This document shows, one piece after another, positions 1,188 through 61,031 of a stretch of DNA of 64,000 nucleotides. Made by a program: the position numbers and the translations under genes. The notes below the pieces were generated by a model, which did not search any database, was not told where the DNA came from, and worked only from the letters and a program-made list of their open reading frames with translations. Numbering within the stretch: position 1 is the first letter of the stretch; every line of letters starts with the position of its first letter. Source of the stretch: Tubulanus polymorphus (Eukaryota > Animalia > Nemertea); NCBI RefSeq assembly GCF_964204645.1, contig NC_134036.1, forward strand, positions 1,426,001 to 1,490,000, in the 5' to 3' direction.

Positions 1188-4100
1188 ATGTATCGTGAAA
1201 GAAACATCTTTCGTTTTTTGCTGTTGTTGATTCTATGTTTATTCATCACAAACACATCAGGTGAGTTAATCAATAATCGTTGGTTCCAGAGCTGTTGAAA
1301 ACGTAGAAATCGTAAATTGTACGATTTCAATCCATAAGAGAGCACCGATGATAACCAGAGAAAGAAGAGAATTATTGTTGGAGAACAGCATTTGGAGAAT
1401 ATTTTTGTAAAATAATCTTCTTTTTGTCATTTCAGCAAAATGTTTTGGGAAGAGTTGTACTGGTTGGTTGTGTCATTGCAGTAATACAGCTGTGGACCAA
1501 TGTCCAATCAAGGGTCAGAATATAGATGGCGCTTTAACGTGTCCTGATCCTAATACTGCATGTGAGTCTACAATAAAAATTCCATATCCCTGGACACCGC
1601 CAGGATGGACCGGACCAGCTTGTCAAATCGGTAAGTTTTCTGTATCAACTGTGGGTCAGGTCAAATATCACTGAACCCCGGATTTTCCCCAGATTAACGG
1701 TTTAACTCAACTAATCCGTCATATGAAGCGGCTTTTATTGAAATGAAAATTTTGAAAAAATAAAAGGGAAAAAAATAAAATGAATCATTTTTTTAGAAAT
1801 CCTACCTAATTCACGTAGATCCAAATGGCGACGTTTTCCGTATTAGGGAGCTTAGTCCGAAAAACGTAAAAATAGGCCCATGATCTGTGATTCTTTTTTA
1901 CTTTAAGAAATATCATTTTTTGAAAATACGAAATATCACCATCTGGATGTCATGAAATTATTTCGTGGCTTAAAGGACGCGAATATAGTTTTTTTAATTT
2001 TACGTACATAAGCATAGAATCGAGCTACTTTTTTGTTGATTTTAGGGTGACATTTTCGACTGATATTTATAGTAGCTTAGTTTCGGCGACTACGTAACCA
2101 AAGCTAAGAAATGAAATGATGGAAATAAAATATTTATTTTGAAAATTCTATTCTGCTCGTTTTGTAGGTAACGTGGCTCGCGGTAAAACAGGTACGATGT
2201 CATCCGTTTATTCCGACTCATACGGCGGTAGTAGATGTACAGATGGTCAAACGCTAGCTCACATTGCTTATCTCAGTTATAAGGATATGTGTCACACTAA
2301 TGAGGATCAAGACGCCTGGATTAGAATTGATCTTGGAACACAATACGTGGTACATAAAGTTACACTTTGGGATAGACCAGACGCGGCTGATTGCGGCGAC
2401 GCTGAGTGGAGTGAGTACAAATTATAAATGTTGATTATATCATTGATTATTTCGGTCAAATCTGAAAAAATAGAACTTTTAACTGGAAAAGTCTCGTTAG
2501 ATATAAATTCCGTCTAGTAGATGAAATATCTTCAAAACTAACCAATCATTGATGGATTCTATGAGATGAGTTGAAATATTGAACCCTACCGAAACATCGA
2601 ACTCTGAGTCATCAATAATTAATATCAATGGTTAATATCGTTTAACTCATATCTGATACAAAGAATACGTTAGAAAAAGTCTGGTTGAATATAACCCCGT
2701 TTTAGTTTAGAGATTTTCAAAATCTACCAATTGTTGATCGATTCAGGAACTAAATTCCGCACTGTTTCACACAGTTTTCAGTTACCTTTGACTCGAGATG
2801 AAAATTAAAAAATCTAGAGACAAGATTTTTAACCTGAACTGTGGAAATGTGCGTGGGCCATGAATAATTTGTTTTCCGTTCGACATCAATGTATCTGCGG
2901 TATTCATGGGCGACTCTCTTCAACTTGTTTTCACGAAGTTAAATCTGATTTTCCCCTAGAAAAACGTGCGCGCATGTGCATGGGGAGGTGGAGGAGTTAA
3001 AATAACCGGAAGTCAAGCGAACGTACTTCATGCACGGCCCCTTTACTTATTTTTTCAAAAGAACTTGAACAGAATTGTTTTGCTCCCAAAGCAATCTTCA
3101 ACTTCCCTGATTTCGTGCATTAATTTTGTTTTGTCGGAGTTAACTGCAATATTTCAAAGCTCCTTAATCTTTTCTCAGAAAAACGCGAACGCAACATGGA
3201 GATTCGAGTTGGAAATGAATATGGCACCAATACAAGTATTTCTACATCTAACCAGAAATGTGCTTACCAGGGCCCCGCTCTCTGTGGAACACATAAAACA
3301 TTATCATGCAGCCCAGGTCCTATAGTTGGACGATTCGTCACCGTTCAACACAAGAACATTGGTAAGGCAGAGGCTCTCGCACTGGCAGAAATAGAAGTTA
3401 TCGGGTTCAAATATATCGGTAAGTTTTACATGACTATATATATGTGTAAACTATAAAGAGTATGGAAATGGATTTTGCTTTTCTCGAAAATATTCAGTCG
3501 CTTGTATATAGAATTTACCCCCGAACGAAAAATTTTGAAATGAAAAGAAGTCTCCCTTTATTACCAAAATTTTGTTTTTAGCACCCATTCATTTATGGAT
3601 TTATTATTGTTAAAATTAGATCGATTTATAAAAATATTCAGTGACTTGTAATGAGAACATATTTCCGAAAGATCGAATGATTCATATTTTTCGTATCAAA
3701 TTTGAATTTCTGTTTAGCACCCGGTAGTTGCAGTAAGGGATCGAACTCATTTGGATGTATGATTGAATGTAGATGTTACAACAGTGAAAGTTGTAACTAT
3801 TTGAGTGGTATCTGTGAATCTGGCTGTTCACGGAATTACATCGGAAAGTGGTGCGAGTCAGGTATATTACACTGAATCATAGATTCCTGGGAATCTCACT
3901 TCCTATTCCCGAAATATAGTAACCAATATGAATCGAAAATGATACCAAGTCAAAAAAACCGAAAGTAAAAGATCCTTACCCTTTATTTTATTCAAATCAC
4001 CTGAAATTAACATCTCAGATTTCTTTTTCAGAATTGAAATCGTTTTCTCAATTAACAAAATCTGCGCTGACAGATAACAGTGTAAAAGTCAGTTGGACCG

Positions 4101-5035
4101 CTTACTCGGGTTCTGTAGTAGATTCAGGTCGTGGTACTGTCAGCGTTCAGTATCTAGTCGTTTATCGTAAAATATCAGAAAACACTTGGACTAATCAGGA
4201 AACTGCAGGAGTCCTTACACATCGCACAATTACTGGTTTAACTCCTAATACCGGGTATAACATAGCTGTTAGACTACAGAAATTAGAGAACGGTCAACTT
4301 ATATCAACTGCGAGTCTGACTAGTACAGTATTAACTTTGTGTGCAGGTAAAACCCCTCATTCTAATAAACTCTTAATCATCAATTCAAACACAGAATTGT
4401 GTTGAACATGTTTGTTTTACTGTAGATCCATTAAACGGTCCTAAAGGTGTTCGTGTGGTGTCCACAGCGGTTGAGAACAGTAACACGTGGCCCCAGACAA
4501 CCAATCTGATACTTACATGGACCGTAAGTGTGCCTCAACCAGAATCACATAAATTCACCTGGGCCCGGTTTTATAGACTAGTGTTACCTTCAACCCGGGG
4601 CTAACTTAATTTATTTTCTTACTTTATTAACTAATTCACCTGATGTTCATTTATATCTATATGACAAGGGAAGAAAATTTGACCTTCCCTTTCAGTGACA
4701 CATGATAAAAACATGTAGTGAATTATAATTATGTTGCAGGCTTTAACTGCTGCAGAGTTACAGTGTGACGTCACTAAAGCTGTTTATCAAGTCGAGTATA
4801 AACAACTGAACGGACAAACATGGACCACAACAGCGGCGCAACCTACCGGCCACACACTAACAGGACTAGAACCTGATACTGATTATGAAGTTAGAGTTGG
4901 TGTAAAGAATGACGTCACTCAGAAATTCATTTACACCAAACCTAAAAGTTACAAAACGTCGACTGCGGGTAATTCAATCCCACATTAGATATAGCCAAAA
5001 CGAGAAACTTGAATAAGAGTAAATGTAGTTGGCTC

Positions 5036-5118
<83 letters not shown>

Positions 5119-8100
5119 TTGGAGAACAGCATTTAGAGAATGTTTTTTGTAAAACAATCTTCTTTTGTCATTTCAGTAATATGTTTTGGGAAGAGTTGTT
5201 CTGGTTGGGAGTGTCATTGCAGTAATACAGCCGTGAACATATGTCCAATAAAGGGACAGAATATAGATGGCGCTTTAATGTGTCCAAATCCTAACACTGC
5301 ATGTGAGTCTTCAATAAAAACTCCGTATCCCTGGACATCACCAGGATGGACCGGACCAGCTTGTCAAATCAGTAAGTTTTCTGTATCAACTGTGGGTCAG
5401 GTCAAATATCACTGAACCCCGGATTTTTCCCAGATTAATGGATTAACTCAACTAATCCGTCATGTGAAGCGGCTTTTATTGAAATGAAAATTTTGAAAAA
5501 ATAAAAGGAAAAATAATAAAATGAATTATTTTTTTAGAAATTCTTCCTAATTCACGTAGATCCAAATGGCGACGTTTTCCGTATTAGGGAGCTTAGTCCG
5601 AAAAACGTAAAAATAGGCCCATGATCTCTGATTCTTTTTTACTTTAAGAAATATCATTTTTTGAAAATACGAAATATCACCATCTGGATGTCATGAAATT
5701 ATTTCGTGGCTTAAAGGACGCGAATATAGTTCTTTAATTTTACGTACATAAGCATAGAATCGAGCTACTTTTTTGTTGATTTTATGGTGACTTTTCGACT
5801 GATATTTATATTAGCTTAGCTTCGGAGACTATGTAACCAAAGCTAAGAAATGAAATGATAGAAATAAGATATTTATTTTGAAAATCCTATTCTGCTCGTT
5901 TTGTAGGTAACGTGGCTCGCGGTAAAACAGTTACGATGTCATCCGTTTTGTCAATCCCTACGTTTACCGCTAGTAAATGTACAGATGGTCGGACGGTAAC
6001 TAAACCATATAAAGATCTATGTCACACTCGTTATGATCAAAACGCCTGGATTAGAATTGATCTCGGAACTCAATACGTGGTACATGAAGTTACACTGTGG
6101 GATAGAACAGACGCGGCTGGTTGCGACCTGCCGTGGAGTGAGTACAAATTATTAATGTTGATTGATCATCTAGGCCAAATATGATAGAAAAAAATATATA
6201 ACTTCAGCTCGAAAAGCCTGGTTGAATATAAACCAAGTTTAGATGAGTGATTTTTTCAGAAAAGTTTGACTCGAGATGAGTTGAAACTTTGAACTCTACC
6301 GGAATATCGAACTCTGAGTCATCAATAATCAATAATCTGTAAATAAAGTCAGTTCGACAACAATGTGTCTGTGGTATCCATGGATGACAACTTCATGAAA
6401 AATACGTTATTGGAAAATTTTGAATCAACTTTTTCAAACGTGTCAACATTTTCAGTCGATAACTATAAATTTGTGTTAGGGGCCGTGCGCCTGTCGAAAA
6501 CAATGAATTTATTTTTAGATTTGTTTTTCACAGAATTTGAATAGAATTGCTCTGCACCCAAAGCAATCTTCAGCTTCCCGGATGTCGTGCATTATTATTT
6601 GTTTTCATCTTTCAAAGCTTCTTAATTCTTTTTCTAAGAAAAACGTTCGCGCAACCTGGAGATTCGAGTTGGAAATGAATATGGCACCAATACAAGTATT
6701 TCTACATCTAACCAGGAATGTGCTTACCAGGGTCCCCCTCTCTGTGGTAGGCATAAAACATTAGCGTGCAGCCCAGGTCCTATAGTTGGACGATACGTCA
6801 CCGTTCAACACAAGAACATTAGTAATGCAGAGTATCTCAACCTGGCAGAAATAGAAGTTATCGGGTTCAAATATATCGGTAAGTTTTACATGACTATATA
6901 TATGTGTAAACTATAAAGAGTATGGAAATGGATTTTGCTTTTCTCGAAAATATTCAGTGACTTGTATATAGAATTTACCCCCGAACGAAAAATTTTGAAA
7001 TGAAAAGAAGTCTCCCTTCATTACCAAAATTTACCCATTCATTTAAGGATTATATTATTGTTAAAATTAGATCGATTTTCATAAAAATATTCAGTGACTT
7101 GTAATGGGAATGTATTTCCGAATGTTCAAACAGTTCATATTTTCGTATCAAATTTGAATTTCTGTTTAGCACCCGGTGGTTGCAGTAAGGGATCGAACTC
7201 ATTTGGATGTATGATTGAATGTAGATGTTACAACAATGAAAGTTGTAACTATTTGAGTGGGATCTGTGAATCTGGCTGTTCACAGAATTACATCGGAAAG
7301 TGGTGCGAGTCAGGTATATTACACTGAATCAGAGATTCCTTAGAATCTCGGTCCCAACTGTAAACGACTGAAAGTAAAGATCCTTGTTCATCTAAAACTA
7401 ACATCAATCTATTTTCAGAATTTAAGTTGTTTTCGCTATTAACAGAATCTGCGCTGACAGATAACAGTGTAAGAGTCGGTTGGACAGCTTACTCGGGTTC
7501 TGTAGTAGATTCAGGACGTGGTACTGTCAGCGTTCTGTATCAAGTCGTTTATCGTAAGATATCAGAAAAGACTTGGACTAATCAGGAAACTGCAGGAGTC
7601 CTTACACATCACACAATTACTGGTTTAACTCCTTATACCAGGTATAAGATAGCTGTTAGACTACAGAAATTAGTGAACGGTCAACTTATATCAACTGCGA
7701 GTCTGACTAGTATGACTAGTACAGTATTAACTTTGTGTGCAGGTAAAACCCCTGATTCTAATAAACTCTTAAACTGTAAATGAGTAAAACATGTTGCTGT
7801 CGTCATCAAGTAGATGTCAATTCACAGAATCGCATTACTTAATTTGTCTGTGGTGTTTATTTCAGTACCAGGACCTCCCGCTTCTCTCGACTACTCATTC
7901 ACAAGGGATACATTGAAAACTACATTGACATGGACTTTACCAAACAGTCCAAATTGTGATGTCATCAATTATTGGGTAGGAATTAACTTGTCCTGACCAT
8001 TAGAGGGCACCATCTGCGCTATACTGTAACGTGTCCCTATCTGTTTTCAGCTCACGTGTGAACCCATCAGTACAACTTCCACAACACCTTTAACAGACAT

Positions 8101-11100
8101 AAAAACAATCAACAAACCTAAAATCAAAGGCTCCATCACAACTTTAGACATAACGACGTCACTGATACCTTTTACTCAATACAACTGTTCAATGTTTGCC
8201 TCGAATAGTAAAGGGGAAGGGTCACCTGCCAGTGTTAGCTTTTGGTCAGGTGAGTAATTTGAACCCAATGACCTCAAGTATTCATTGATGTCACTTGTCA
8301 ACATTGTCACTTACTGATATTTCAGGTGAAATAACAATTCCCCTACTGGTTGTCAAGAAAGCAGCGATAACAAACACGACTGTTACACTTCAAATAACAC
8401 GTGTTAATACTGGAAACATTACGTAAGTGTCCTCTTATTTTCATCTATAAATAATGCATGATCTTATAAAACAATTTTTCTCTGATTTTCAGCGGTTACG
8501 AGGTGATCGTCAAGAAACATGATGGACCAATCAGCCGTCGCCGGAAGCGTGCAGTCAACCAATCACAGTACGTCTCGTACGGAGAAGCTAAACAGCGAGG
8601 ATTATCAGTTTATATTACTGCAGTTCTACCACCGAAAGTGCCCTCTGAGTTTATAGTTGGTGATACACGTGACTATTGTGGTTACTTTAATGCTCCTCTA
8701 GAAACTGGAAAATCTTACAGTTTTATTTTAGGAATCGTTGTCAATTATAACGGAGTGAGTTCATCTTGTCTTTGAATGTGAATTGTAGTTTCCAATTTGG
8801 AGGTGACTCTAGCCATTTTTTGGGGATTTTTCAGGAAACGTTTCGGCATTATCCACCAATAGAACAGCAAGAGAGAATCACTGTTCAAGCATCGTCTAGT
8901 AAGGCAGGGATAATAGGTGGCGTTGTGACAGTTGTTCTAATACTGTTATTGGTTGCTGTTGCTCTATATATTGTTTGGAGGTATGAGTAAATAGTGGCGA
9001 CCTCTATAGTCCAAGGCAAATCATTTGACAATCGCCCAATGCCCCTATTCTCACAAAAGTTCCCCCTCATTCAGTTACCCACTATATGGACGCTTTAACT
9101 TTTCAGACGCGGTGGATTCAAAATTAAACAAGCATCGAACAATGCAGAAATATCCATGGGGAATATTTCACCTTCTGATAAACCTATTGAAATACCTTTG
9201 GCGAGAGAAGAAGCAGAGGCTGTTTATGTGAATTGTCCTAAATCACCGAGACAAGAAAATACAGCTAGTGCAAATGCTGCATTTTCAAGAGGTTTGTCTC
9301 AAGACCGTGAGGTTTTGTAAAGTTGTAGCCTATTTTAACATTTAACACTATGATTCCTCTCCCTATAGTAAGCTCCGCGTATTTCAATATCTATGACGAT
9401 CCGAATGCTGTAGATGAAACGCAAGATGGCGAGGATCATCACTACGAAATCGCTTCTAAAGGCGCTACTATGATTTGTGACCTGTTGGGAGAGACCTTGA
9501 TGAAGACCTCTGATGAGTGGAAGAATATGAATGAAGAATTTCAGGTAAAATTGCTGGGAGGTTGCGACTGCTCGTGGGTAAGACATGTGATCATGTTCTG
9601 GATCTATTTTTTCTTTAGAGTGTTCTCAAATTCAGACGAGGATTGAGCGCCTGCGCTGAGACAGTGGAGAATCTTGAGAAAAACAGGTTTCCAAACATAT
9701 TGGCCTGTAAGTATTGCCTGGTCATTATATAGACATGAGTTCTGTCGTAAATACAAGAGTTGCCTTGTGAAACATCTCTATTGAGTTTCATTGACTTTGA
9801 GTGGTTTTTTCTAGATGATTCGACTAGAGTTGTTCTGGAACAAATCGGTGAAGATCCAACATCAGATTACATCAATGCCAATTATATTCGGGTGATAAAT
9901 CAATCCCTCTCTGCTCTTGAAAATGTTGCCACGTCCTCCTATTGTATATAAACGGAAATTCTGAATTTAATTTTCAGGGACTAACTGGTCATGTAATATG
10001 TATTGCTTGCCAGGGTAAGTCTCATGATTCAATTGTTGCGTGTTACTTGTGCGCTCACTCATCTAACTTGTTCTTTCAGCTCCATTGCTATCTACAATCA
10101 ATGACCATTGGCGGATGATCTGGCAAGAGAAATGTCCAGCTATCATTGTACTTACTGTTCTGACTGAAGGACAAGGCAAAGATAAGAAGGTTGCAAAAAT
10201 ACTCTAAGATGCTGAAGCGTAAACAGGCAAAATTTAGAAAAATAAGTACCGTTGATTTTTAACTTGCAGGTGAAGTATCATTTATATTGGCCAACAAAAC
10301 TGAACACGAAAGGTCGATATGGAGATATAACAGTAAAAGTTGCAAAGAAAATGGAAAAACACACTGAGCCTCCGGCTGCCGTACATTTCTTGTCCATTAC
10401 AAAGGTAATGATCATGTCATTGCTTTATCATGAGTGACCTAGTGTTGGTATTTCTGCTATCTATAAGCTTGGTTCAGATATCGATTTTAATAGACTCTCC
10501 CGATAAGTAACATTTCATTTATTTTATAGCGTGGCCACAAACAAGCACATAATCTATTAGTGTTTCACTATCGAGGATGGCCGGATCATGGTGTACCGTT
10601 CCCGGCTTTATCTGTTGTTCGTATGCAACAGTTCATCAAACAGCGTCTTACCGACCCGGATCAGGGACTTGTGCTGGTTCATGGCAGGTAAATTAATTTG
10701 AAATCGTCCAGTCCTTTACAGTTAAGGACACGTTTAGATATGTTATTGTTTGTGTTCTCAGTGCTGGTGCTGGAAGGACGGGTTGTTATATCGCAACGGA
10801 GCAGCTTCTTGAGAAAGCCAAGAAAGATGGACTTGTTAACGTATTCGACATGTTTAGGAAATTACGACAACAAAGACCAGAAATGATCCAAAATATGGTA
10901 AATCTTAATAAAGTTACTGCCTCTCATTTCACGTTTCCAAAATGGAAAACTTCAACGTGTTCCTTTATTACTATCTACTTCAGAAACAGTACATTCTCGT
11001 GCACCAGATTCTACTGGAGGAACTGATACTGGGACCAGTGGCATACACGACCACGAGTTTCAGAGAATCATACGAGGAAAGAAAGGCAACGCGACCAGTA

Positions 11101-12550
11101 TCTAAAAACGTGTCTGATAAAATAGAGGAACAATTTCTTGTACGTATTAAGATCAGCCAAAATGAGATGAAGGGTTTTGGATAACAAACAGATGGCAGCA
11201 ATGAATCCATTGACCCAGATAAACTAGATTTCAATTTTTTTCCTTGGTTTGGTTTTGAAGAAAATAATTACCCAATGCGTTGTTTTCTGATGCAGGTTTT
11301 GAAGGCATCGATTCCGATTCAGGACGAGGAATCACTAGCAGTGGCCAAACTACTCAACAATGTTAACAAGTCCCGATACAAAGACATCCTTCCCGAGGCA
11401 CAGTATCAACCGCAACTCTCACATAAAGGGTTCATCAATGCTTCATTTGTGCACGTGAGTTTGATTCTGAATTAATAGCTGTCCGTGGAATATCTGGTGG
11501 AGGGGGGCATTAATCCTCGATAATCTTCAGTTGAGATATCGATAAGTTATAAGAATCTGATTGAAATACTTTCCTTTTTACAGACGATCACAGATAAAAA
11601 CGTGTTTATAGCAACACAAAGTCCAATGGCAAATACTATTACTGACTTCTGGCAAATGATCTTTGACTATAACTGTGAAATTATTGTGATGATGCATCAA
11701 GAATATCCACAAGATCCGGTAAGGTGTATTCCTAGTCTAGCATCTAGTATACATAGGTCTGCTTTGTAGGTATCTTTTTCCAGAATACATCTTCTGATTT
11801 TAGACATATGCAAGTTACTGGCCTGCAGCTGGAAGCATCAAATGCAGTCCTTTTACAATCACTGTGGAGGAAGTTTCATTGCTCTGTAAGACCATCGTTC
11901 GCCGGGATTTGATCCTCAAAAAACAGAATGTATGTTGAGTTGTTTCGGTAGCTACTGTACAGAGAAATATGGCTGCATTTTTCGGAATTTCCTTCGACAT
12001 TGCTATTTACTATGACCTGATCAGATCAATTGTATTTCTTTGATTTCACAGGAATCGCATCAGATTCGTCAGATCCAGTTTTTAGGATGGCCTGAGGATG
12101 AGTCGGTTCCTAATTTACAACATCTATTCGAGTTTGTGAATCTAGTTACAAGAGAACACGTGACCAGTCCTATTGTTGTACATTGCATGTTCGTATCTTA
12201 GCAACATCAGTCAATTATTCAAAACAATATCACATATTCTATCGATTATGCAAATTTTACAGGGACAGCACAACGAGAGCAGGGTTATTTTGTGCGGCAT
12301 TTGAACTGATCACCAAGGCGCCATCTAGCGAACAAATCGATATTTATCACTGTATACAAAAACTACGAATGACTCGACCTCAATTCATTCCAAATTTGGT
12401 AAGAAATTAATCGATTTTCTTTGTATTTTCACGAGTTATTTTATTGATGTATTTTTCTTGTTTTCGTATTCATAGGAACAGTACAAGTTTCTACACGATC
12501 TGGTGATATTCTATTTACAAGGATTCGACACTTATGTGAACCTTAGTTAG
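1188..12550 (+). CDS. FTLD-EGF-FN3 receptor-type protein tyrosine (pseudo)phosphatase, copy A (two lectin modules, 34 exons, about 1836 aa)
   Basis: Manual splicing gives one continuous frame. Signal peptide 1188-1260 (MYRERNIFRFLLLLILCLFITNTS); Cys-rich 1436-1630; FTLD 2168-2410+3179-3418; EGF 3718-3861; FN3 4032-4346, 4426-4523, 4740-4968. Second module 5177-5371, 5907-6137, 6639-6878, 7170-7313, 7419-7742. FN3 7866-7975, 8051-8249, 8326-8422, 8493-8754 (RRRKR); TM 8835-8980; JM 9107-9291, 9369-9544; D1 9619-11139 (8 exons: KNRF, DYINAN, WPDHG, HGSAGAGR); D2 11296-12398; last exon 12476-12550 (..FDTYVNLS*). Exon sum is 5511 nt, divisible by 3. Confidence 0.88.
2168..3418 (+). CDS. F-type lectin (fucolectin, F5/8-C-like fold) domain A1, split over two exons
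   Basis: NVARGK..MSS..CTDG..CHT..WIRIDLG..V.LWDR.D ... IRVG..NQKC..C..GRFVTV..LAEIEV. The H-x26-R-x-D fucose-binding motif spacing is exact. Confidence 0.85.
5038..5116. repeat. (AT)n microsatellite in the intron at the module-1/module-2 junction of gene A
   Basis: About 39 perfect AT units; orthologous tract at 35222-35281. Confidence 0.98.
5907..6878 (+). CDS. F-type lectin domain A2 (two exons)
   Basis: Same framework as A1 with different loops. The second exon uses an AAG acceptor (6636-6638) instead of CAG. Confidence 0.82.
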
Positions 12551-20200: not shown

Positions 20201-23200
20201 TTAAAATGCTATTAGTTGTCGTCATCAAGTAGATGTAAATTCGTATTTTATAAGTAATTTGTCTGTTGCATATATTTCAGTACCAGGACCTCCCGCTTCT
20301 CTCGACTTCTCATTCACAAAGGATACATTGAAAACTACATTGATATGGACAGCACCAAACAGTCCAAATTGTGATCTCATCAATTATCGGGTAGGAATTC
20401 TCTTGTCCTGACCAGTAGAGGGTACCACCCGCGCCATACTGTAACGTGTCTCCTATCTATTTTCAGCTCACGTGTGAACCCATTAGTACAACTTCCACAA
20501 CACCTTTATCAGAGATAAAAACATTCAACAAACCTAAAATCAAAGGCTCCGTCACAACTTTAGACATAACGACGTCACTGATACCTTTTACTCAATACAA
20601 ATGTTCAATTTATGCCTGGAATAGTAGAGGCGAAGGCTCGCCTGCCAGTGTTAGCTTTTGGACAGGTTTGTAATTTGACCACAACGACCTCAAATTTCCA
20701 CTGATGTCATCGATGTCAACATTGTCTGTATCGATATTTCAGGTAAAATAACCATTCCTCAACTGGTTGTCAAGAAGACAGCGGTAACAGACGCGACTGT
20801 TACACTTCAAATAACACGTGTTAACACTGGTAACATTACGTAAGTGTCCTCCATACATTTATCCATAAATAACGCATGATTTTTTTAAACTGGATATTCT
20901 CTGATTTTCAGCGATTACGAGGTCATCGTGAAGAAACATGATGGACCAATCAACCGTCGCCGGAAGCGTGCAGTCAGCCAATCACAGTACGTCTCGTACG
21001 AAGAAGCTAAACAGCGAGGATTATCAGTTTATATTACTGCAGTTCTACCACCGGAAGTGCCCTCTGAGTTTACAGTTGGTGATACGCGTAACTATAGTGG
21101 TTACTTTAATGCTCCTCTAGAAACTGGGAAATCATACAGTTTTATTTTAGGAATCGTTGTCAATTATAACGGAGTGAGTTCATCTAGTGTTTCAAAGCAA
21201 ATTGTAGTTTCCAATTTGGAGGTGATTCCAGCCATTTCTTTTTGATCTTTCAGGAAACGTTTCGGCATTATCCACCAATAGAACAACAGCAAGAGAGAAT
21301 CATTGTTAAAGCACCGTCTAGTAAGGCATGGATAATAGGTGGCGTTGTTGCAGCTGTTCTTATACTGTTATTGGTTGCTGTTGCTCTATATATTGTTTGG
21401 AGGTACGAGTAAATAGTGGCGACCTCTAAAGTCCAATGCAAATCATTTGACAATAGCCCAATGTCCCTACTCTCACAAAGGTTCCCCCTCATTCAGTTAC
21501 CCACTATATGGACGCTTTAACTTTTCAGACGCGGTGGATTCAAAACTAAACAAACATCGAACAATGCAGAAATATCCATGGGGAATATTTCACCTTCTGA
21601 TAAACGTATTGAAATACCTTTGGCGAGAGAAGAAGCAGAGGCTGTTTATGAGAATTGTCCTAAATCATCGAGACAAGAAAATACAGCTAGTGCAAATTCT
21701 GCATTTTCAAGAGGTTTGTCTCAAGACCGTGAGGTTTTGGAAAGTTGAAGCCTAATAATGTTTTAAAACTATGATTCCTGTCTATATAGAAAGCTCCGCG
21801 TATTTCAATATCTATGACGATCCGAATGCTGTATGCGAAACGCCAGATGGCGAGGATCGTCATAACGAAATCGCTTCTAAAGGCGCTACTATGATTTGTG
21901 ACCTGTTGGGAGATACTTTGATGAAAACCTCTGATGAGTGGAAGAATATGAATGAAGAATTTCAGGTAAAATTGCAGGGAGGTTGTGACTACGCGTCGGT
22001 AAGAGATGTGATTATTTTTTGGATCTATTTTATCTGTAGAGTGTTCTCAAGTTGAGACGTGGATTGAGCGCCTGCGCTGAGAAAGTGGAAAATCTTGAGA
22101 AAAACAGGTTTCCAAACATATTGGCCTGTAAGTATTGCCTGGTCATTATATAGACATGAGTTCTGTCGTAAATACAAGAGTTGCCTTGTGAAACATCTCT
22201 ATTGAGTTTCATTGACTTTGAGTGGTTTTTTCTAGATGATTCGACTAGAGTTGTTCTGGAACAAATCGGTGAAGATCCAACATCAGATTACATCAATGCC
22301 AATTATATTCGGGTGATAAATCAATCCCTCTCTGCTCTTGAAAATGTTGCCACGTCCTCCTATTGTATATAAACGGAAATTCTGAATTTAATTTTCAGGG
22401 ACTAACTGGTCATGTAATATGTATTGCTTGCCAGGGTAAGTCTCATGATTCAATTGTTTCGTGTTACTTGTGCGCTCACTCATCTAACTTGCTCTTTCAG
22501 CTCCATTGCTATCTACAATCAATGACCATTGGCGGATGATTTGGCAAGAGAAATGTCCGGCTATTATTGTACTCACTGCTCTGACTGAAGGACAAGGCAA
22601 AGATAAGAAGGTTGCAAAAATACTCTAAGATGCTGAAGCGTAAACAGGCAAAATGTAGAAAAATAAGTACCGTTGATTTTTAACTTGCAGGTGAAGTATC
22701 ATTTATATTGGCCAACAAAACTGAACACGAAAGGTCGATATGGAGATATAACAGTAAAAGTTGCAAAGAAAATGGAAAAACACACTGAGCCTCCGGCTGC
22801 CGTACATTTCTTGTCCATTACAAAGGTAATGATCATGTCATTGCTTTATCATGAGTGACCTAGTGTTGGTATTTCTGCTAACTATAAGCTTGGTTCAGAT
22901 ATCGATTTTAATAGACTCTCCCGATAAGTAACATTTCATTTATTTTATAGCGTGGCCACAAACAAGCACATAATCTATTAGTGTTTCACTATCGAGGATG
23001 GCCGGATCATGGTGTACCGTTCCCGGCTTTATCTGTTGTTCGTATGCAACAGTTCATCAAACAGCGTCTTACCGACCCGGATCAGGGACTTGTGCTGGTT
23101 CATGGCAGGTAAATTAATTCGAAAATCTTCCAGTCCTTTACCGTTAAGGACACGTTTAGATATGTTATTGTTTGTGTTCTCAGTGCTGGTGCTGGAAGGA

Positions 23201-24971
23201 CGGGTTGTTATATCGCAACGGAGCAGCTTCTTGAGAAAGCCAAGAAAGATGGACTCGTTAACGTATTCGACATGTTTAGGAAATTACGACAACAAAGACC
23301 AGAAATGATCCAAAATATGGTAAATCTTAATAAAGTTACTGCCTCTCATTTCACGTTTCCAAAATGGAAAACTTCAACGTGTTCCTTTATTACTATCTAC
23401 TGCAGAAACAGTACATTCTCGTGCACCAGATTCTACTGGAGGAACTGGTACTGGGACCGGTGGCATACACGACCACGAGTTTCAGAGAATTATACGAGGA
23501 AAGAAAGGCAACGCGTCCCGTATCTAGAAACGTGTCTGATAAAATAGAGGAACAATTTCTTGTACGTATTAAGATCAGCCAAAATGAGATGAAGGGTTTT
23601 GGATAACAAACAGATGGCAGCAATGAATCCATTGACCCAGATAAACTAGATTTCAATTTTTTTCCTTGGTTTGGTTTTGAAGAAAATAATTACCCAATGC
23701 GTTGTTTTCTGATGCAGGTTTTGAAGGCATCGACTCCGATTCAGGACGAGGAATCACTAGCAGTGGCCAAACTACTCAACAATGTTAACAAGTCCCGATA
23801 CAAAGACATCCTTCCCGAGGCACAGTATCAACCGCAACTCTCACATAAAGGGTTCATCAATGCTTCATTTGTGCACGTGAGTTTGATTCTGAATTAATAG
23901 CTGTCCGTGGAATATCTGGTGGAGGGGGGCATTAAGCCTCGATAATCTTCAGTTGAGATATCGATAAGTTATAAGAATCTGATTGAAATACTTTCCTTTT
24001 TACAGACGATCACAGATAAAAACGTGTTTATAGCAACACAAAGTCCAATGGCAAATACTATTACTGACTTCTGGCAAATGATCTTTGACTATAACTGTGA
24101 AATTATTGTGATGATGCATCAAGAATATCCACAAGATCCGGTAAGGTGTATTCCTAGTCTAGCATCTAGTATACATAGGTCTGCTTTGTAGGTATCTTTT
24201 CCAGAATACATCTTCTGATTTTGGACATATGCAAGTTACTGGCCTGCAGCTGGAAGCATCAAATGCAGTCCTTTTACAATCACTGTGGAGGAAGTTTCAT
24301 TGCTCTGTAAGACCATCGTTCGCCGGGATTTGATCCTCAAAAAACAGAATGTATGTTGAGTTGTTTCGGTAGCTACTGTACAGAGAAATATGGCTGCATT
24401 TTTCGGAATTTCCTTCGACATTGCTATTTACTATGACCTGATCAGATCAATTGTATTTCTTTGATTTCACAGGAATCGCATCAGATTCGTCAGATCCAGT
24501 TTTTAGGATGGCCTGAGGATGAGTCGGTTCCTAATTTACAACATCTATTCGAGTTTGTGAATCTAGTTACAAGAGAACACGTGACCAGTCCTATTGTTGT
24601 ACATTGCATGTTCGTATCTTAGCAACATCAGTCAATTATTCAAAACAATATCACATATTCTATCGATTATGCAAATTTTACAGGGACAGCACAACGAGAG
24701 CAGGGTTATTTTGTGCGGCATTTGAACTGATCACCAAGGCGCCATCTAGCGAACAAATCGATATTTATCACTGTATACAAAAACTACGAATGACTCGACC
24801 TCAATTCATTCCAAATTTGGTAAGAAATTAATCGATTTTCTTTGTATTTTCACGATTTATTTTATTGATGTATTTTTCTTGTTTTCGTATTCATAGGAAC
24901 AGTACAAGTTTCTACACGATCTGGTGATATTCTATTTACAAGGATTCGACACTTATGTGAACCTTAGTTAG
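17264..24971 (+). CDS. FTLD-EGF-FN3 receptor-type PTP (pseudo)phosphatase, copy B (single lectin module, 27 exons, about 1350 aa)
   Basis: Signal 17264-17336; Cys-rich 17512-17703; FTLD 18171-18401+18988-19215; EGF 19516-19665; FN3 19791-20114, 20281-20390, 20467-20665, 20743-20839, 20912-21173; TM 21254-21402; JM 21529-21713, 21790-21965; D1 from 22040 (CAT GGC AG at 23101-23108); last exon 24897-24971. No frameshift seen. Confidence 0.86.
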
Positions 24972-38200: not shown

Positions 38201-41200
38201 CAATCAACAAACCTAAAATCAAAGGCTCCATCACAACTTTAGACATAACGACGTCACTGATACCTTTTACTCAATACAACTGTTCAATGTTTGCCTCGAA
38301 TAGTAAAGGGGAAGGGTCACCTGCCAGTGTTAGCTTTTGGACAGGTGAGTAATTTGACCCAATGACCTCAAGTATTCATTGATGTCACTTGTCAACATTG
38401 TCACTTACTGATATTTCAGGTGAAATAACAATTCCCCTACTGGTTGTCAAGAAAGCAGCGGTAACAAACACGACTGTTACACTTCAAATAACACGTGTTA
38501 ATACTGGAAACATTACGTAAGTGTCCTCTTATTTTCATCTATAAATAATGCATGATCTTATAAAACAATTTTTCTCTGATTTTCAGCGGTTACGAGGTGA
38601 TCGTCAAGAAACACGATGGACCAATCAGCCGTCGCCGGAAGCGTGCAGTCAACCAATCACAATACGTCTCGTACGGAGAAGCTAAACAGCGAGGATTATC
38701 AGTTTATATTACTGCAGTTCTACCACCGGAAGTGCCCTCTGAGTTTATAGTTGGTGATACACGTGACTATAGTGGTTACTTTAATGCTCCTCTAGAAACT
38801 GGGAAATCTTACAGTTTTATTTTAGGAATCGTTGTCAATTATAACGGAGTGAGTTTATCTTGTCTTTGAATGTGAATTGTAGTTTCCAATTTGGAGGTGA
38901 CTCTAGCCATTTTTTGGGGATTTTTCAGGAAACGTTTCGGCATTATCCACCAATAGAACAGCAAGAGAGAATCACTGTTCAAGCATCGTCTAGTAAGGCA
39001 GGGATAATAGGTGGCGTTGTGACAGTTGTTCTAATACTGTTATTGGTTGCTGTTGCTCTATATATTGTTTGGAGGTGCGAGTAAATAGTGGCGACCTCTA
39101 TAGTCCAATGCAAATCATTTGACAATCGCCCAATGCCCCTAAAGTTCCCCCTCATTCAGTTACCCACTGTATGGACGCCTTAACTTTTCAGACGCGGTGG
39201 ATTCAAAACTAAACAAACATCGAACAATGCAGATGTATCCATGGGGAATATTTCACCTGCTGATGAAGGTATTGAAATACCTTTGGCGAGAGAAGAAGCA
39301 GAGGCTGTTTATGTGAATTGTCCTAAATCATCGAGACAAGAAAATACAGCTAGTGCAAATGCTGCATTTTCAAGAGGTTTGTCTCAAGACCGTGAGGTTT
39401 TGGAAAGTTGAAGCCTAATAATGTTTTAACACTATGATTCCTGTCTATATAGAAAGCTCCGCGTATTTCAATATCTATGACGATCCGAATGCTGTATGCG
39501 AAACGCAAGATGGCGAGGATCATCATAACAAAATCGCTTCTAAAGGCGCTACTATGATTTGTGACCTGTTGAGAGAGACCTTGATGAAAACCTCTGATGA
39601 ATGGAAGAATATGAATGAAGAATTTCAGGTAGAATCGCCGTGAGGTTGGGACTGCGCGTTGGTAAGACATTTGATTATGTTCTGGATCTATTTTGTCTTT
39701 AGAGTGTTCTCAAGTTGAGACGAGGATTGAGCGCCTGCGCTGAGAAAGGGGAAAATGCTGAGAAAAACAGGTTTCCAAACATTTTGGCCTGTAAGTATTG
39801 CCTGGTCATTATATAGACATGGGTTCTGTCGTAAATACAAGAGTTGGCTTGTGAAACATCTCTATTGACTTTCATTGACTTTGAGTGGTTTTTTCTAGAT
39901 GATTCGACTAGAGTTGTTCTGGAACAAACCGGTAAAGATCCAACATCAGATTACATCAATGCCAATTATATTCGGGTAAGGAATCAATCCTTCTATGCTC
40001 TTCCAAAGGTTTTCCTGTCCTCCTATAGTATATAAACCGAAATTCTGAATTTAATTTTCAGGGACTAACTGGTCATGTGATATGTATTGCTTGCCAGGGT
40101 AAGTCTCATGATTCAATTGATTCGTGTTACTTGTGCGCTCACTCATCTAACTTGCTCTTTCAGCTCCATTGCTATCTACAATCAATGACCATTGGCGGAT
40201 GATTTGGCAAGAGAAATGTCCAGCTATTATTGTACTCACCGACCTGACTGAAGGACATGACAAAGATAAGAAGGTGGCAAAAATACTCTAAGATGCTGAA
40301 GCGTAAACAGGCAAAATGTAGAAAAATAAGTACTTTTGATTTTTAACTTGCAGGTGAAGTGTCATTTATATTGGCCAACAAAACTGAACACGAAAGGTCG
40401 ATATGGAGATATAACAGTGACAGTTGCAGAGAAAATGGAAACACACACTGAGCCTCCGGCTGCTGTACATTTCTTGTCCATTACAAAGGTAATGATCATG
40501 TCATTGCTTTATCATGAGTGACCTAGTGTTGGTATTTCTGCTATCTATAAGCTTGGTTCAGATATCGATTTTAATAGACTCTCCCGATGAGTAACTTTTC
40601 ATTTATTTCATAGCGTGGCCACAAAGAAGCACATAATCTGTTAGTTTGTCACTATCGAGGATGGCCGGATCATGGTGTACCGTTCCCGGCTTCATCTGTT
40701 GTTCGTATGCAACAGTTCATCAAACAGCGTCTTACCGACCCGGATCAGGGACTTGTGCTGATTCATGGCAGGTAAATTAATTCGAAAATCTCCCAGTCCT
40801 TTACTGTTAAGGACAAGTTTAGAAATGTTATTGTTTGTGTTGTGTTCTCAGTGCTGGTGCTGGAAGGACAGGTTGTTATATCGCAACGGAGCAGCTTCTT
40901 GAAAAAGCTAAGAAAGATGGACTCGTTAACGTATTCGACATGACTAGGAAATTACGACAACAAAGACCAGAAATGATCCAGAATATGGTAAAATCTTAAT
41001 AAATTTACTGCCTCTCATTTCACGTTTCCAAAATGGATAACTACAACGTGTTCCTTATTACTATCTACTTCAGAAACAGTACATTCTCGTGCACCAGATT
41101 CTACTGGAGGAACTGGTACTGGGACCGGTGGCGTACCCGACCACGAGTTTCAGAGAATTATACGAGGAAAGAAAGGCAACGCGTCCCGTATCTAGAAACG

Positions 41201-42650
41201 TATCTGATAAAATAGAGGAACAATTTCTTGTACGTATTAAGATCGGCCAAAATGAGATGAAGGGTTTTGGATAACAAACAGATGGCAGCAATGAATCCAT
41301 TGACCCAGATAAACTAGATTTCAATTTTGTTTCCTTGGTTTGGTTTTGAAGAAAATAATTACCCAATGCGTTGTTTTCTGATGCAGGTTTTGAAGGCATC
41401 GACTCCGATTCAGGACGAGGAATCACTAGCAATGGCCAAACTACTCAACAATGTTAACAAGTCTCGACACAAAGACATCCTTCCTGAGGCACAGTATCAA
41501 CCACAACTCTCACATAAAGGGTTCATCAATGCTTCATTTGTGCACGTGAGTTTGATTCTGAATTAATAGCTATCCGTGGAATATCTGGTAGAGGGGGGGG
41601 GGGGGGGCATTAAGCCTCGATAATCTTCAGTTGAGATATCGATAAGTTATAAGAATCTGATTGAAATACTTTCCTTTTTACAGACGATCACAGATAAAAA
41701 CGTGTTTATAGCAACACAAAGTCCAATGGCAAATACTTTTACTGACTTCTGGCAAATGATCTTTGACTATAACTGTGAAATTATTGTAATGATGCATCAA
41801 GAATATCCACAAGATCCGGTAAGGTGTATTCCTAGTCTAGCATCTAGTATACATAGGTCTGCTTTGTAGGTATCTTTTTCCAGAATACATCTTCTGATTT
41901 TAGACATATGCAAGCTACTGGCCTGCAGCTGGAAGCATCAAATGCAGTCCTTTTACAATCACTGTGGAGGAAGTTTCATTGCCCTGTAGGACCATCGTTC
42001 GCCGGGATTTGATCCTCCAAAAACAGAATGTATGTTGAGTTGTTTCGGTAGCTACTGTTCAGAGAAATATGGCTGCATTTTTCGGAATTTCCTTCGACAT
42101 TGCTATTTACTATGACCTGATCAGATCAATTGTATTTCTTTGATTTCACAGGAATCGCATCAGATTCGTCAGATCCAGTTTTTAGGATGGCCTGAGGATG
42201 AGTCGGTTCCTGATTTACAACATCTATTCGAGTTTGTGAATCTAGTTACAAGAGAACACGTGACCAGTCCTATTGTTGTACATTGCATGTTCGTATCTTA
42301 GCAACATCAGTCAATTATTCAAAACAATATCACATATTCTATCGATTATGCAAATTTTACAGGGACAGCACAACGAGAGCAGGGTTATTTTGTGCGGCAT
42401 TTGAACTGATCACCAAGGCGCCATCTAGCGAACAAATCGATATTTATCACTGTATACAAAAACTACGAGTGACTCGACCTCAATTCATTCCAAATTTGGT
42501 AAGAAATTAATCGATTTTCTTTGTATTTTCACGAGTAATTTTATTGATGTATTTTTCTTGTTTTCGTATTCATAGGAACAGTACAAGTTTCTACACGATC
42601 TGGTGATATTCTATTTACAAGGATTCGACACTTATGTGAACCTTAGTTAG
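31635..42650 (+). CDS. FTLD-EGF-FN3 receptor-type PTP (pseudo)phosphatase, copy C (two lectin modules with identical FTLDs, 34 exons)
   Basis: Signal 31635-31707; 31887-32081; FTLD 32548-32781+33279-33521; EGF 33826-33969; FN3 34141-34455, 34535-34632, 34849-35077. Module 2: 35342-35536, 35990-36223, 36721-36963, 37265-37408, 37514-37837. Furin exon 38587-38848; TM 38929-39074; D1 from 39703 (ATT CAT GGC AG at 40761-40771); last exon 42576-42650. Confidence 0.86.
35222..35281. repeat. (AT)n microsatellite at the module junction of gene C
   Basis: 30 perfect AT units. Confidence 0.98.
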
Positions 42651-59518: not shown

Positions 59519-60240
59519 TTAGACTCAATCAATTTTCTAAACGGATGCTTTGCATTTTTATCGTCAAACTTAAGCCCACAATATTTCTTATCGTGTGTCC
59601 TACTATCGTCTGATGTCTGCAAACGGATTTTCCGATTCATTGCCGTTTTGAGTGATGGCTTTTTTCCTCTCTCTCTTTCTCTCAACGTCTGTTATTGTTG
59701 TTGTTAATGGTAACCGTGTGTAACAATTCTTTCCGTTACGTACAATTTAAACTTTGCGCACCTGTTAATTCAATTACTGCTTAATGTCAACGCGCATGCG
59801 CGTAATTATCACATATCGCCGGAAATAACTTCCATTACGAGAAAAATGTAAAAGGAAGAAAAAGAAAATAAAAAAAATGAATTCGTAAGTTGCGAAATGT
59901 TGTGAATTTAACTGTAAATAGTATCGGCTTAATCCTAATCCGCAGTTCATTTCACGGATAATCCTCGATAATCCGTCACGGATTACGAAGTTGTTAATCC
60001 CGGCTTATCGCCGTTGCCGTCAGGCAGTTCGGAATCAGGTGGTGGATTTTCGAGTACAGTTTCACTGACGATTTCAACCGCAAAGTTAAATCGTTATAGA
60101 AGCATTTTTAGTCCATGACTCGGGAATGGGAGGGAAGGGATGTTCAGACTGGCGTATGAATAACTCTATGGGTAACACCCAAATCTCCTGATAGAAACGC
60201 GAAGTCTTATGAAACCTCTAGTGAATTCTATGGGTTCCTG

Positions 60241-61031
60241 CAAAATCAATTAGTAATTTTTGAAGCCTTATGGCTGGGATGCAAGACTGGTTAACCACCA
60301 TGGAAGCATTTGGTTTCCTAAAAAATCAATTAGTAATTTTTCTAAGCCTTATGGGTGGGATACAAGACTGGTTAACCACCATGGAAGCATTTGGTTTCCT
60401 AAAAAGTTAATTTCTAATTTTCCTGAGCCTTATGGCTGGGATGCAAGACTGGTTAACCACCATGGAAGCATTTGGTTTCCTAAAAAATCAATTAGTAATT
60501 TTTCTAAGCCTTATGGCTGGGATGCAAGACTGGTTAACCACCATGGAAGCATTTGGTTTCCTAAAAAGTTAATTTCTAATTTTCCTGAGCCTTATGGCTG
60601 GGATGCAAGACTGGTTAACCACCATGGAAGCATTTGGTTTCCTAAAAAGTTAATTTCTAATTTTCGTAAGCCTTATGGCTGGGATGCAAGACTGGTTAAC
60701 CACCATGGAAGCATTTGGTTTCCTAAAAAATTAATTTCTAATTTTCCTAAGCCTTATGGCTGGGATGCAAATCTGCTTAACCACCAGGGAAGCATTTGGG
60801 TTCCTAAAAAATCAATTAGTAATTTTTCTAAGCCTTATGGCTGGGATGCAAGACTGGTTAACCACCAGGGAAGCATTTGGGTTCCTAAAAAAATAATTTC
60901 TAATTTTTCTAAGCCTTATGGCTGGGATGCAAGACTGGTTAACCACCAGGAAAGCATTTGGTTTCCTAAAAAATTAATTTCTAATTTTTCTAAGCCTTAT
61001 GGCTGGGACGCAAGACTGGTTAACCACCAGG
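60241..61031. repeat. 78-bp minisatellite x10
   Basis: Unit 'aagccttatggctgggatgcaagactggttaaccaccatggaagcatttggtttcctaaaaaatcaattagtaatttttct'; no indels seen. Confidence 0.95.

What the first reader, a model, noticed from the sequence alone, without database searches (positions are those of the whole stretch)
10680..10790. D1 catalytic Cys replaced by Gly in all three receptors, with WPD and Q loops intact
The signature motif is split by an intron and is invisible in the ORF track: GTT CAT GGC AG|intron|T GCT GGT GCT GGA AGG ACG GGT = VHGSAGAGRTG. The GGC codon is at 10683-10685 and is also GGC in B (23104-23106) and C (40767-40769). Canonical is HCSAGxGR. WPDHGVP, DYINAN and MIQ..QY remain; KNRY is KNRF. 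A Cys-to-Gly change is what makes STYX a pseudophosphatase, and in RPTPs D1 is normally the active domain. The retained pocket suggests a phosphotyrosine-binding or trapping module under selection.
Basis: partly seen in the sequence, partly recalled or inferred. Interest (0 to 1): 0.85.

Follow-up and report, generated by a model that had tools for sequence, protein, structure and literature searches.

The report
Receptor phosphatases lacking their catalytic cysteine
Three neighbouring ribbon-worm genes, members of a family of at least 17, encode lectin-headed cell-surface tyrosine-phosphatase-like receptors whose normally active domain has glycine where the catalytic cysteine should be. The domain is still kept intact by selection, so these receptors probably bind or scaffold rather than dephosphorylate.

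Summary
In genes A, B and C the D1 exon ends GTT CAT GGC AG|gt and the next exon starts ag|T GCT GGT GCT GGA AGG ACG GGT, which reads VHG-S-AGAGRTG. WPDHGVP, DYINAN, MIQNMKQY and the P-loop Arg are present, and KNRY is KNRF.

The public RefSeq model of gene A, XP_074661537.1 from Tubulanus polymorphus, uses the same junction. No canonical alternative splice can supply a Cys codon. Three DNA runs show no other letter at the codon. No RNA run was available, so the junction is not confirmed by cDNA.

The three copies are near-identical duplicates and are not independent evidence. The genome, however, holds 17 GGC copies. Among them D1 evolves at pN/pS about 0.3, the same as in three Cys-retaining sister genes. 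Substitutions avoid conserved PTP-core positions, and the WPD-to-Q-loop stretch is the most conserved part of the protein.

D2 keeps its Cys but has WPE, a glycine-less P-loop and no first Q-loop Gln. The whole tail is therefore probably catalytically dead. Phosphotyrosine binding is inferred, not shown.

One odd copy on another contig carries TGC, yet it is broken and nests inside the Gly clade.

The scan had already noted this family on neighbouring DNA (s1-487467, s1-487502, s1-500348). I class it as a new variant of a known kind: a STYX-like change in a PTPRU-like double pseudophosphatase receptor.

The parts
10683..10685 (+). Gene A: GGC (Gly) codon at the position of the D1 catalytic Cys
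23104..23106 (+). Gene B: the same GGC codon
40767..40769 (+). Gene C: the same GGC codon
10530..10687 (+). Gene A exon E7: WPD loop (WPDHGVP, 10578-10598) up to VHG plus AG of the split Ser codon
   Evidence: 100% match to P0143 residues 1432-1483
10688..10761 (+). Gene A intron of 74 nt (gtaaat...ctcag), phase 2, splitting the P-loop. The Cys-retaining paralogues and D2 have an intron at the same position and phase.
10762..10897 (+). Gene A exon E8: T of the Ser codon, then AGAGRTG... up to the first Q-loop Gln (MIQNM)
9619..11139 (+). Gene A D1 domain, exons E2-E9 (9619-9706, 9815-9891, 9978-10014, 10080-10189, 10270-10404, 10530-10687, 10762-10897, 10984-11139). KNRF lies at 9679-9690.
11296..12547 (+). 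Gene A D2 domain, exons E10-E14 plus the last exon (11296-11454, 11584-11718, 11804-11929, 12052-12188, 12263-12398, 12476-12547). Motifs: WPEDESVP, VVHC|MDSTTRAG (Cys codon 12184-12186), RPQFIPNLEQY.
22040..23561 (+). Gene B D1 exons (E7 22951-23108, E8 23184-23319)
23718..24968 (+). Gene B D2 exons. The acceptor of exon E12 (24223-24224) reads GG, not AG.
39703..41229 (+). Gene C D1 exons (E7 40614-40771, E8 40852-40987)
41387..42647 (+). Gene C D2 exons
1432..9544 (+). Gene A ectodomain, transmembrane and juxtamembrane exons: two Cys-rich/F5-8-type-C lectin-like/EGF-like/FN3 modules, further FN3 domains, then the TM segment

Best explanation
Genes A, B and C are intact members of a Tubulanus polymorphus family of single-pass receptors, with at least 17 copies. 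Each has an F5/8-type-C lectin-like head, EGF-like and FN3 repeats, a transmembrane segment and a tandem D1-D2 tyrosine-phosphatase tail.

A single T-to-G change (TGC to GGC) removed the D1 nucleophile. D1 therefore cannot form the cysteinyl-phosphate intermediate and is a pseudophosphatase. This step follows from the established PTP mechanism; it was not assayed here.

The rest of D1 is maintained by purifying selection: the fold, the P-loop backbone with its Arg, the WPD Asp, both Q-loop Gln and the KNRF recognition loop. This step is shown.

D2 keeps Cys within CX5R, but it has WPE, a P-loop without glycines (MDSTT) and Pro in place of the first Q-loop Gln. The same holds in the Cys-retaining sister genes, so D2 is unlikely to supply activity. 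This step is inferred.

The most likely mode of action is that ligand binding by the variable lectin head positions a catalytically dead tail. The tail then binds phosphotyrosine proteins, or the substrates of active paralogues, and shields or scaffolds them instead of dephosphorylating them. STYX and PTPRU work this way. This step is inferred.
For: Sequence and splice model.

Pfam and PDB alignment of the two exon halves flank the catalytic column.

RefSeq models of gene A and of ten other clusters read (V/I/L)HG(S/R)AGAGRTG across the same junction.

In the genome, 17 copies carry GGC.

DNA contigs of three runs cover the codon with no other letter.

D1 pN/pS is 0.28 pooled and 0.35 in six independent pairs (p = 3e-9). 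This equals the 0.23-0.32 seen in the Cys-retaining trio.

Only 7 of 56 PTP-core positions vary within the family, against 82 of 234 other positions (p = 7e-4). At core positions gene A departs from the distant consensus only at the catalytic Cys and at one A-clade Cys-to-Tyr.

The WPD-to-Q-loop stretch is the most conserved part of seven full-length paralogues, at 0.95-0.96 identity, against 0.55-0.8 in the lectin modules.

The AlphaFold model of D1 has pLDDT 88. Its best PDB matches are the PTPRT, PTPRK and PTPRM D1 domains, TM 0.84-0.87.

Precedents are STYX, where Gly replaces Cys and the G-to-C change restores activity (PMC8622459), and PTPRU, a receptor with two dead domains that still binds substrates of its paralogues (PMC7320164).
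Against: No transcript evidence was obtainable here. The only candidate RNA run held none of the stretch.

No biochemical data exist.

Gene conversion among copies is evident. A versus B shows D2 dS of 0 but D1 dS of 0.057, and tracts have mosaic histories. Copies are therefore not independent, and homogenisation inflates apparent conservation.

Three of the 17 Gly copies are damaged or truncated. Gene B has a mutated D2 splice acceptor.

Retention of the general-acid Asp and of the Q-loop Gln is not needed for mere binding. It could simply reflect structural constraint.

KNRF replaces KNRY, though it does so in the Cys-retaining paralogues as well.
Confidence: 0.62

Rival explanations
1. D1 is dead and conserved, but it works as a docking or regulatory surface that does not use the phosphotyrosine pocket. 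The D2 domain of PTPRK recruits Afadin in this way. Alternatively D1 is a structural partner of D2.
For: Pseudophosphatase D2 domains recruit substrates and regulate D1 (PMC9640194; PMC9464862). Purifying selection shows that the fold is kept, not that the pocket is used.
Against: The best-conserved stretch is exactly the WPD, P-loop and Q-loop region. The P-loop Arg, WPD Asp and Q-loop Gln are unchanged in all intact copies. This is more than a pocket-independent surface would need.
Confidence: 0.2
2. The Gly copies are young, redundant duplicates on the way to becoming pseudogenes. Their conservation reflects recency and gene conversion rather than function.
For: A, B and C are 95-100% identical including introns. 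Histories are mosaic and shaped by conversion. Copies at C12:1.348 Mb, C12:1.110 Mb and on C7 carry frameshifts, stops or truncation. Gene B has a mutated acceptor. No RNA evidence was obtained.
Against: Fourteen of 17 copies have open, correctly spliced D1 and D2 exons. Divergence between clades reaches intron K 0.3-0.4, yet D1 pN/pS stays near 0.3 (p = 3e-9) and equals that of the Cys-retaining genes. RefSeq predicts full-length proteins, several with isoforms.
Confidence: 0.1
3. Catalysis has moved to D2, which keeps Cys and Arg in a CX5R motif. D1 has become the regulatory domain, reversing the usual order.
For: D2 reads VVHC-MDSTT-R-AG with Cys and Arg in register, plus KSRY. D2 pN/pS is 0.26-0.32.
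Against: D2 has WPE instead of WPD, no glycine in the P-loop and Pro at the first Q-loop Gln. The same D2 is present in the sister genes that still have a canonical D1, so it did not change when D1 lost its Cys. These are the usual marks of inactive D2 domains (PMC7320164).
Confidence: 0.07
4. Artefact: an assembly or base-calling error, or a mis-modelled splice that hides a normal HCSAG motif.
For: The motif is split by an intron, and no cDNA was seen here.
Against: Seventeen separate genomic copies carry GGC. Contigs of three DNA runs show no alternative letter. The donor AG|GTAAAT and acceptor TTCTCAG| are near-consensus. The Cys-retaining paralogues and D2 share the same intron position and phase. 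No other E7-like exon lies in the window. Restoring TGY would need a donor directly after CAT, where the next bases are GG. RefSeq uses the same junction.
Confidence: 0.01

Closest known systems
STYX (phospho-Ser/Thr/Tyr-binding pseudophosphatase, DUSP family)
   Same: The nucleophilic Cys of the HCX5R motif is replaced by Gly while the Arg and the rest of the pocket are kept. STYX binds rather than dephosphorylates, and changing its Gly to Cys restores activity (PMC8622459).
   Different: STYX is a small cytosolic dual-specificity-type domain. This is a classical PTP D1 domain inside a transmembrane receptor, so the two are related only at superfamily level. It is also multi-copy and lineage-specific.
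PTPRU (human R2B receptor with two pseudophosphatase domains)
   Same: It is a receptor whose D1 and D2 are both inactive and which is thought to compete for substrates of active paralogues (PMC7320164). The D1 of the worm proteins is structurally closest to R2B D1 domains. Pfam Fn3_PTPRU matches the membrane-proximal FN3.
   Different: PTPRU keeps the catalytic Cys and is redox-sensitive through it. It is dead because of WPE, a GSRQ recognition loop and pocket rearrangement. Here the reverse holds: the loops are canonical and the Cys is gone. The ectodomain also differs, with lectin-like, EGF-like and FN3 modules and no MAM-Ig.
Cys-less classical PTP-like domains: C. elegans EGG-4/EGG-5 (Cys to Asp)
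   Same: These are PTP-fold proteins without the nucleophile that act by binding a phosphorylated partner (table in PMC8622459).
   Different: They are cytosolic, carry Asp rather than Gly, and are not receptors.
Cys-retaining Tubulanus sister genes (XP_074661320.1 and neighbours, contig C12 at 0.28-0.31 Mb)
   Same: They share the architecture, the intron positions, KNRF and the D2 (VHCMDSTTRTG). D1 is 75% identical.
   Different: Their D1 reads IHCSAGAGRTG. The tract from the end of E7 through E8 is much more diverged than its flanks (pS 0.63 against 0.14-0.28).

Membership tests
Classical protein-tyrosine phosphatase domain (Pfam PF00102) | Sequence and fold match to the PTP domain | tested here: met
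   PF00102 matches the single exons. On the gene A protein P0143 it scores E = 4e-119 with two domains. The D1 model has pLDDT 88 and TM 0.84-0.87 to PTPRT, PTPRK and PTPRM D1.
Catalytically competent classical PTP | Nucleophilic Cys in HCX5R | tested here: not met
   D1 has Gly (GGC) in that column in A, B, C and 14 further copies. That column is Cys in all 21 more distant homologues of alignment A1 and in both Cys-retaining sister genes.
Catalytically competent classical PTP | P-loop Arg, WPD Asp, Q-loop Gln and KNRY Tyr | tested here: inconclusive
   Arg, Asp and both Gln are present. Tyr is Phe (KNRF), also in the Cys-retaining paralogues.
Pseudophosphatase of the STYX kind (nucleophile lost, pocket kept) | Gly at the nucleophile position with the remaining signature intact | tested here: met
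   (V/I/L)HG-S-AGAGRTG
Pseudophosphatase of the STYX kind (nucleophile lost, pocket kept) | No catalytic activity, restored by changing Gly to Cys | not testable with these tools
   Needs recombinant protein and a pNPP or DiFMUP assay.
Pseudophosphatase of the STYX kind (nucleophile lost, pocket kept) | Binds phosphorylated ligands | not testable with these tools
   Inferred only from conserved pocket residues.
Pseudophosphatase of the STYX kind (nucleophile lost, pocket kept) | Maintained by selection, not a decaying gene | tested here: met
   pN/pS is 0.28-0.35, p = 3e-9. Core positions are spared.
Receptor-type PTP with tandem D1-D2 | Signal peptide and ectodomain, one TM segment, two PTP domains | tested here: met
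   Shown by the P0143 architecture and sequence and the exon map.
R2B subfamily (PTPRK/M/T/U), as the RefSeq names suggest | MAM-Ig-FN3 ectodomain | tested here: not met
   Pfam finds F5/8-type-C/NedA-like and FN3 domains but no MAM or Ig. Similarity is limited to D1 and one FN3 type.

The most novel reading that the evidence does not exclude
The family is a diversified glycan or non-self recognition repertoire. Every receptor carries a fully dead tandem phosphatase tail, and signalling works by sequestering or scaffolding phosphotyrosine proteins. This would be a receptor class built on a pseudophosphatase module, created by one nucleotide change and then amplified. The same genome's Arg-to-Trp P-loop paralogues would be a second, independent route to the same state.
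Probability: 0.22. Interest if true: 0.72.

Novelty: new variant of a known kind. Interest (0 to 1): 0.48.

Why it matters
All 37 human classical PTPs keep the catalytic Cys, and pseudophosphatase domains typically retain it too (PMC7320164). PTPRU is described there as the only human receptor with two dead domains.

Here a receptor family lost the D1 nucleophile itself and then expanded to at least 17 copies. D1 evolved no faster afterwards than in its Cys-retaining sisters. This is a natural experiment on what a PTP pocket does when catalysis is impossible.

The pairing of a variable lectin head with a dead tail points to binding-based signalling in an invertebrate recognition receptor. The Gly-bearing and Cys-bearing sister genes, together with a G-to-C revertant, give a ready-made comparison for testing substrate trapping in vitro.

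Tried and rejected
- RNA evidence: the run search found only three DNA-like runs of one study, plus one possible RNA run that held none of the stretch. Laying them showed contigs running through the introns and only three non-canonical single-contig joints, none at the modelled exon borders. The junction therefore stays unconfirmed by cDNA.
- The first Pfam call failed because my coordinates ran into the intron stop. I repeated it correctly.
- The representative search with the 52-residue exon gave only 13 hits, and only the Tubulanus ones were close.
- The look-up of encoding contigs had no record for P0002.
- A search from the Cys-retaining paralogue's D1 found nothing above 45% identity outside Tubulanus. 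No orthologue comparison was therefore possible.
- A single origin of Gly with the C10 Cys copy as outgroup was rejected by the rooted tree.
- Conversion from the known Cys trio as the source of the C10 TGC was rejected. The flanking codons ATT CAT are family-type, not ATA CAC.
- Positive selection around the active site between the two subfamilies was rejected. E8 has dN/dS 0.18, and its high divergence is also synonymous.
- Literature searches for the HGSAG motif and for lectin-headed phosphatase receptors found nothing relevant.
- A look-up of earlier notes for RNA evidence was blank.
- One search was an empty script.
- I did not search or fold a joined spliced model of the window. Exons were searched one by one by reference. 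Whole-domain work used the public RefSeq protein P0143 that a tool returned.

Full report
**Observation**

In gene A the exon that carries the WPD loop ends ...CTG GTT CAT GGC AG and is followed by gtaaat. After 74 nt...ttctcag is followed by T GCT GGT GCT GGA AGG ACG GGT. Genes B and C read the same, with ATT for GTT in C. The GGC codons lie at 10683-10685, 23104-23106 and 40767-40769.

The two exon halves match Pfam PF00102 at profile positions 128-175 and 178-221, on either side of the catalytic column. They also align to the ...VH and AGxGRTG... stretches of solved RPTP domains.

I built an exon model of the cytoplasmic part of gene A. It has 13 exons, all with AG/GT borders and consistent phases. 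D1 reads KNRF, DYINANYI, WPDHGVP, VHG-S-AGAGRTG and MIQNM-KQY.

**Is the splice model right?**

No RNA could be had. The run search returned three runs of one study and one possible RNA run that held nothing. Their contigs run through the introns, for example 10669-10778, and no other letter is reported at 10683-10685.

The indirect evidence is strong:
- Donor and acceptor are near-consensus.
- The Cys-retaining paralogues have the same intron at the same phase (CAC TGC AG|gt).
- D2 also has it, as CAT TGC AT|gt...ag|G.
- There is no second E7-like exon in the window.
- A Cys codon would need a donor directly after CAT, where the bases are GG.
- RefSeq protein XP_074661537.1 (P0143, 1836 aa, 'receptor-type tyrosine-protein phosphatase T-like [Tubulanus polymorphus]') matches all 13 exon peptides of gene A at 100% and reads LVLVHGSAGAGRTG.
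- Ten further RefSeq clusters of the family carry (V/I/L)HG(S/R)AGAGRTG.

Exons were searched singly by reference, and the public protein P0143 stood in for the whole protein.

**Independence**

A, B and C are 95-100% identical over exons and introns alike. Threefold conservation therefore says little.

The genome gives more. The exon-intron-exon stretch occurs 18 times at 92% identity or more. Seventeen copies carry GGC. They lie on contig C12 at 1.08-1.47 Mb and 2.51 Mb, with single copies on C7 and C9. One copy, on C10, carries TGC. Fourteen of the 17 Gly copies have open, correctly bordered D1 and D2 exons. Three are damaged or truncated.

- Three intact lectin-headed receptors lie at C12:0.28-0.31 Mb, for example XP_074661320.1 (P0002). 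Their D1 reads IHCSAGAGRTG and is 75% identical, and their D2 is the same.
- The C10 copy carries TGC. It has a stop in E3 (DPTSD*INANY) and a frameshift in E12, lacks ectodomain pieces, and is annotated only as a 353-359 aa fragment.
- More distant receptors also exist.

**Selection**

I computed Nei-Gojobori counts exon by exon and summed them. Among Gly copies D1 pN/pS is 0.28 and D2 is 0.32, while intron divergence has a median of 0.29.

In six phylogenetically independent pairs, D1 gives 0.35 (binomial p = 3e-9) and D2 gives 0.26. The Cys-retaining trio gives 0.23-0.32 for D1. D1 was therefore not released from constraint when it lost its nucleophile.

Within 13 RefSeq D1 sequences, 7 of 56 positions that are invariant or nearly so across diverse PTPs vary, against 82 of 234 others (odds ratio 0.26, p = 7e-4). 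At those core positions gene A differs from the distant consensus only at the catalytic Cys and at the Cys of KC..YWP, which is Tyr in the A clade.

Across seven full-length paralogues, the WPD-to-Q-loop stretch is the most conserved part, at 0.95-0.96 identity. The lectin modules are the least conserved, at 0.55-0.8.

An AlphaFold model of D1 is confident (pLDDT 88). It superposes best on the PTPRT, PTPRK and PTPRM D1 domains, TM 0.84-0.87.

Gene conversion is a caveat. It is evident from A versus B, where D2 dS is 0 and D1 dS is 0.057. It also shows in the E7-end-to-E8 tract, which has pS 0.63 between subfamilies against 0.14-0.28 in other exons. The E7-end-to-E8 result suggests that the flanks were homogenised and the split is older than it looks.

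**D2**

D2 reads NKSRY, WPEDESVP, VVHC-MDSTT-R-AG and RPQFIPNLEQY. Cys and Arg are in register. However, the general acid is Glu, the P-loop has no glycine, and the first Q-loop Gln is Pro.

The Cys-retaining sisters have the same D2. It did not change to compensate for D1. The tail as a whole is probably inactive, as in PTPRU (PMC7320164).

**An unexplained point**

When rooted with the Cys trio, the broken C10 copy nests inside the Gly clade (100/100 support). The AU test rejects Gly monophyly:
- Whole stretch: p = 2e-4.
- Left half: p = 2e-6.
- Right half: p = 0.44.
- Local 870 nt: p = 0.075.

The C10 copy shares 16 of the other 17 residues fixed between the Gly copies and the Cys trio in E7 and E8, and it has the family-type flanking codons. 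It differs from the Gly copies by one base at the catalytic codon.

Two readings remain open. One is a back-mutation in a dead copy. The other is an old Cys allele that survived while conversion spread GGC through the array.

**Mechanism**

Shown:
- The nucleophile is absent.
- The domain folds as a PTP.
- It is under purifying selection.
- The pocket residues are kept.

Established knowledge: without the Cys no thiophosphate intermediate can form, and Cys-less PTP pockets bind phospho-ligands. STYX is the natural example, with Gly for Cys and activity restored by G-to-C (PMC8622459).

Inferred: the receptors bind or shield phosphotyrosine proteins, or the substrates of the active sister receptors, under control of a variable lectin head.

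**Comparison and novelty**

The change is that of STYX, but in a classical receptor D1. The outcome is that of PTPRU, but by the opposite route. PTPRU keeps the Cys and loses the loops, and that paper notes that retention of the catalytic Cys is typical of pseudophosphatase domains. EGG-4/5 lose the Cys to Asp and are cytosolic.

The RefSeq names 'T-like' and 'kappa-like' reflect D1 similarity only. There is no MAM-Ig ectodomain. I found no paper on such receptors and no relative above 45% identity outside Tubulanus.

The proteins are already in RefSeq, unremarked. This scan had already flagged the family on neighbouring windows. My verdict is a new variant of a known kind, of moderate interest.

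Noticed in passing
G000:C10:9378700-9379072 (minus strand); loci L042 and L053: This is the only close family member with TGC (Cys) at the D1 site. It is a broken copy, with a stop in E3, a frameshift in E12 and missing ectodomain pieces. It nests inside the Gly clade, which means either a back-mutation or an old allele that escaped gene conversion.
   Followed up: partly
L022-L024 (G000:C12 at 9.25, 10.63 and 4.02 Mb); proteins P0030 and P0031: A second group of Tubulanus receptor phosphatases has a D1 P-loop reading VVVHCSSGCGWTG. The invariant Arg of CX5R is Trp, which is an independent route to a dead D1 in the same genome.
   Followed up: no
window 24223-24224: In gene B the acceptor of D2 exon E12 reads GG instead of AG, as in A and C. 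The exon is 126 nt, so skipping it would stay in frame. The nearest upstream AG would shift the frame.
   Followed up: partly
window 10270-10293, and the same place in gene B: In the clade that holds A and B, the conserved Cys of the KC..YWP motif is Tyr (VKYHLYWP). Gene C, the other Gly copies and the Cys-retaining genes keep VKCH.
   Followed up: partly
window 10650-10860 and the equivalent stretch in all copies: The tract from the end of E7 through E8 is far more diverged from the Cys-retaining sister genes than the flanking exons are (synonymous 0.63 against 0.14-0.28). The intron there is 74 nt against about 222 nt. This is a mosaic history, probably gene conversion of the flanks.
   Followed up: partly
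window 32402-32701 and 35844-36143: The two lectin modules within gene C are 100% identical over the 300 nt compared. This is consistent with the intragenic conversion noted earlier on this window.
   Followed up: no
window 60101-61156: A tandem array of about 12 copies of an 81-nt unit lies inside a 298-aa open frame with a 27-residue repeat (...KPYGWDARLVNHHGSIWFPKK...).
   Followed up: no
window 50075-51412 (minus strand): A 445-aa intronless open frame with a carboxylesterase/cholinesterase-like look (FGESAGA motif) sits in a locally GC-rich stretch, 0.47 against about 0.35.
   Followed up: no
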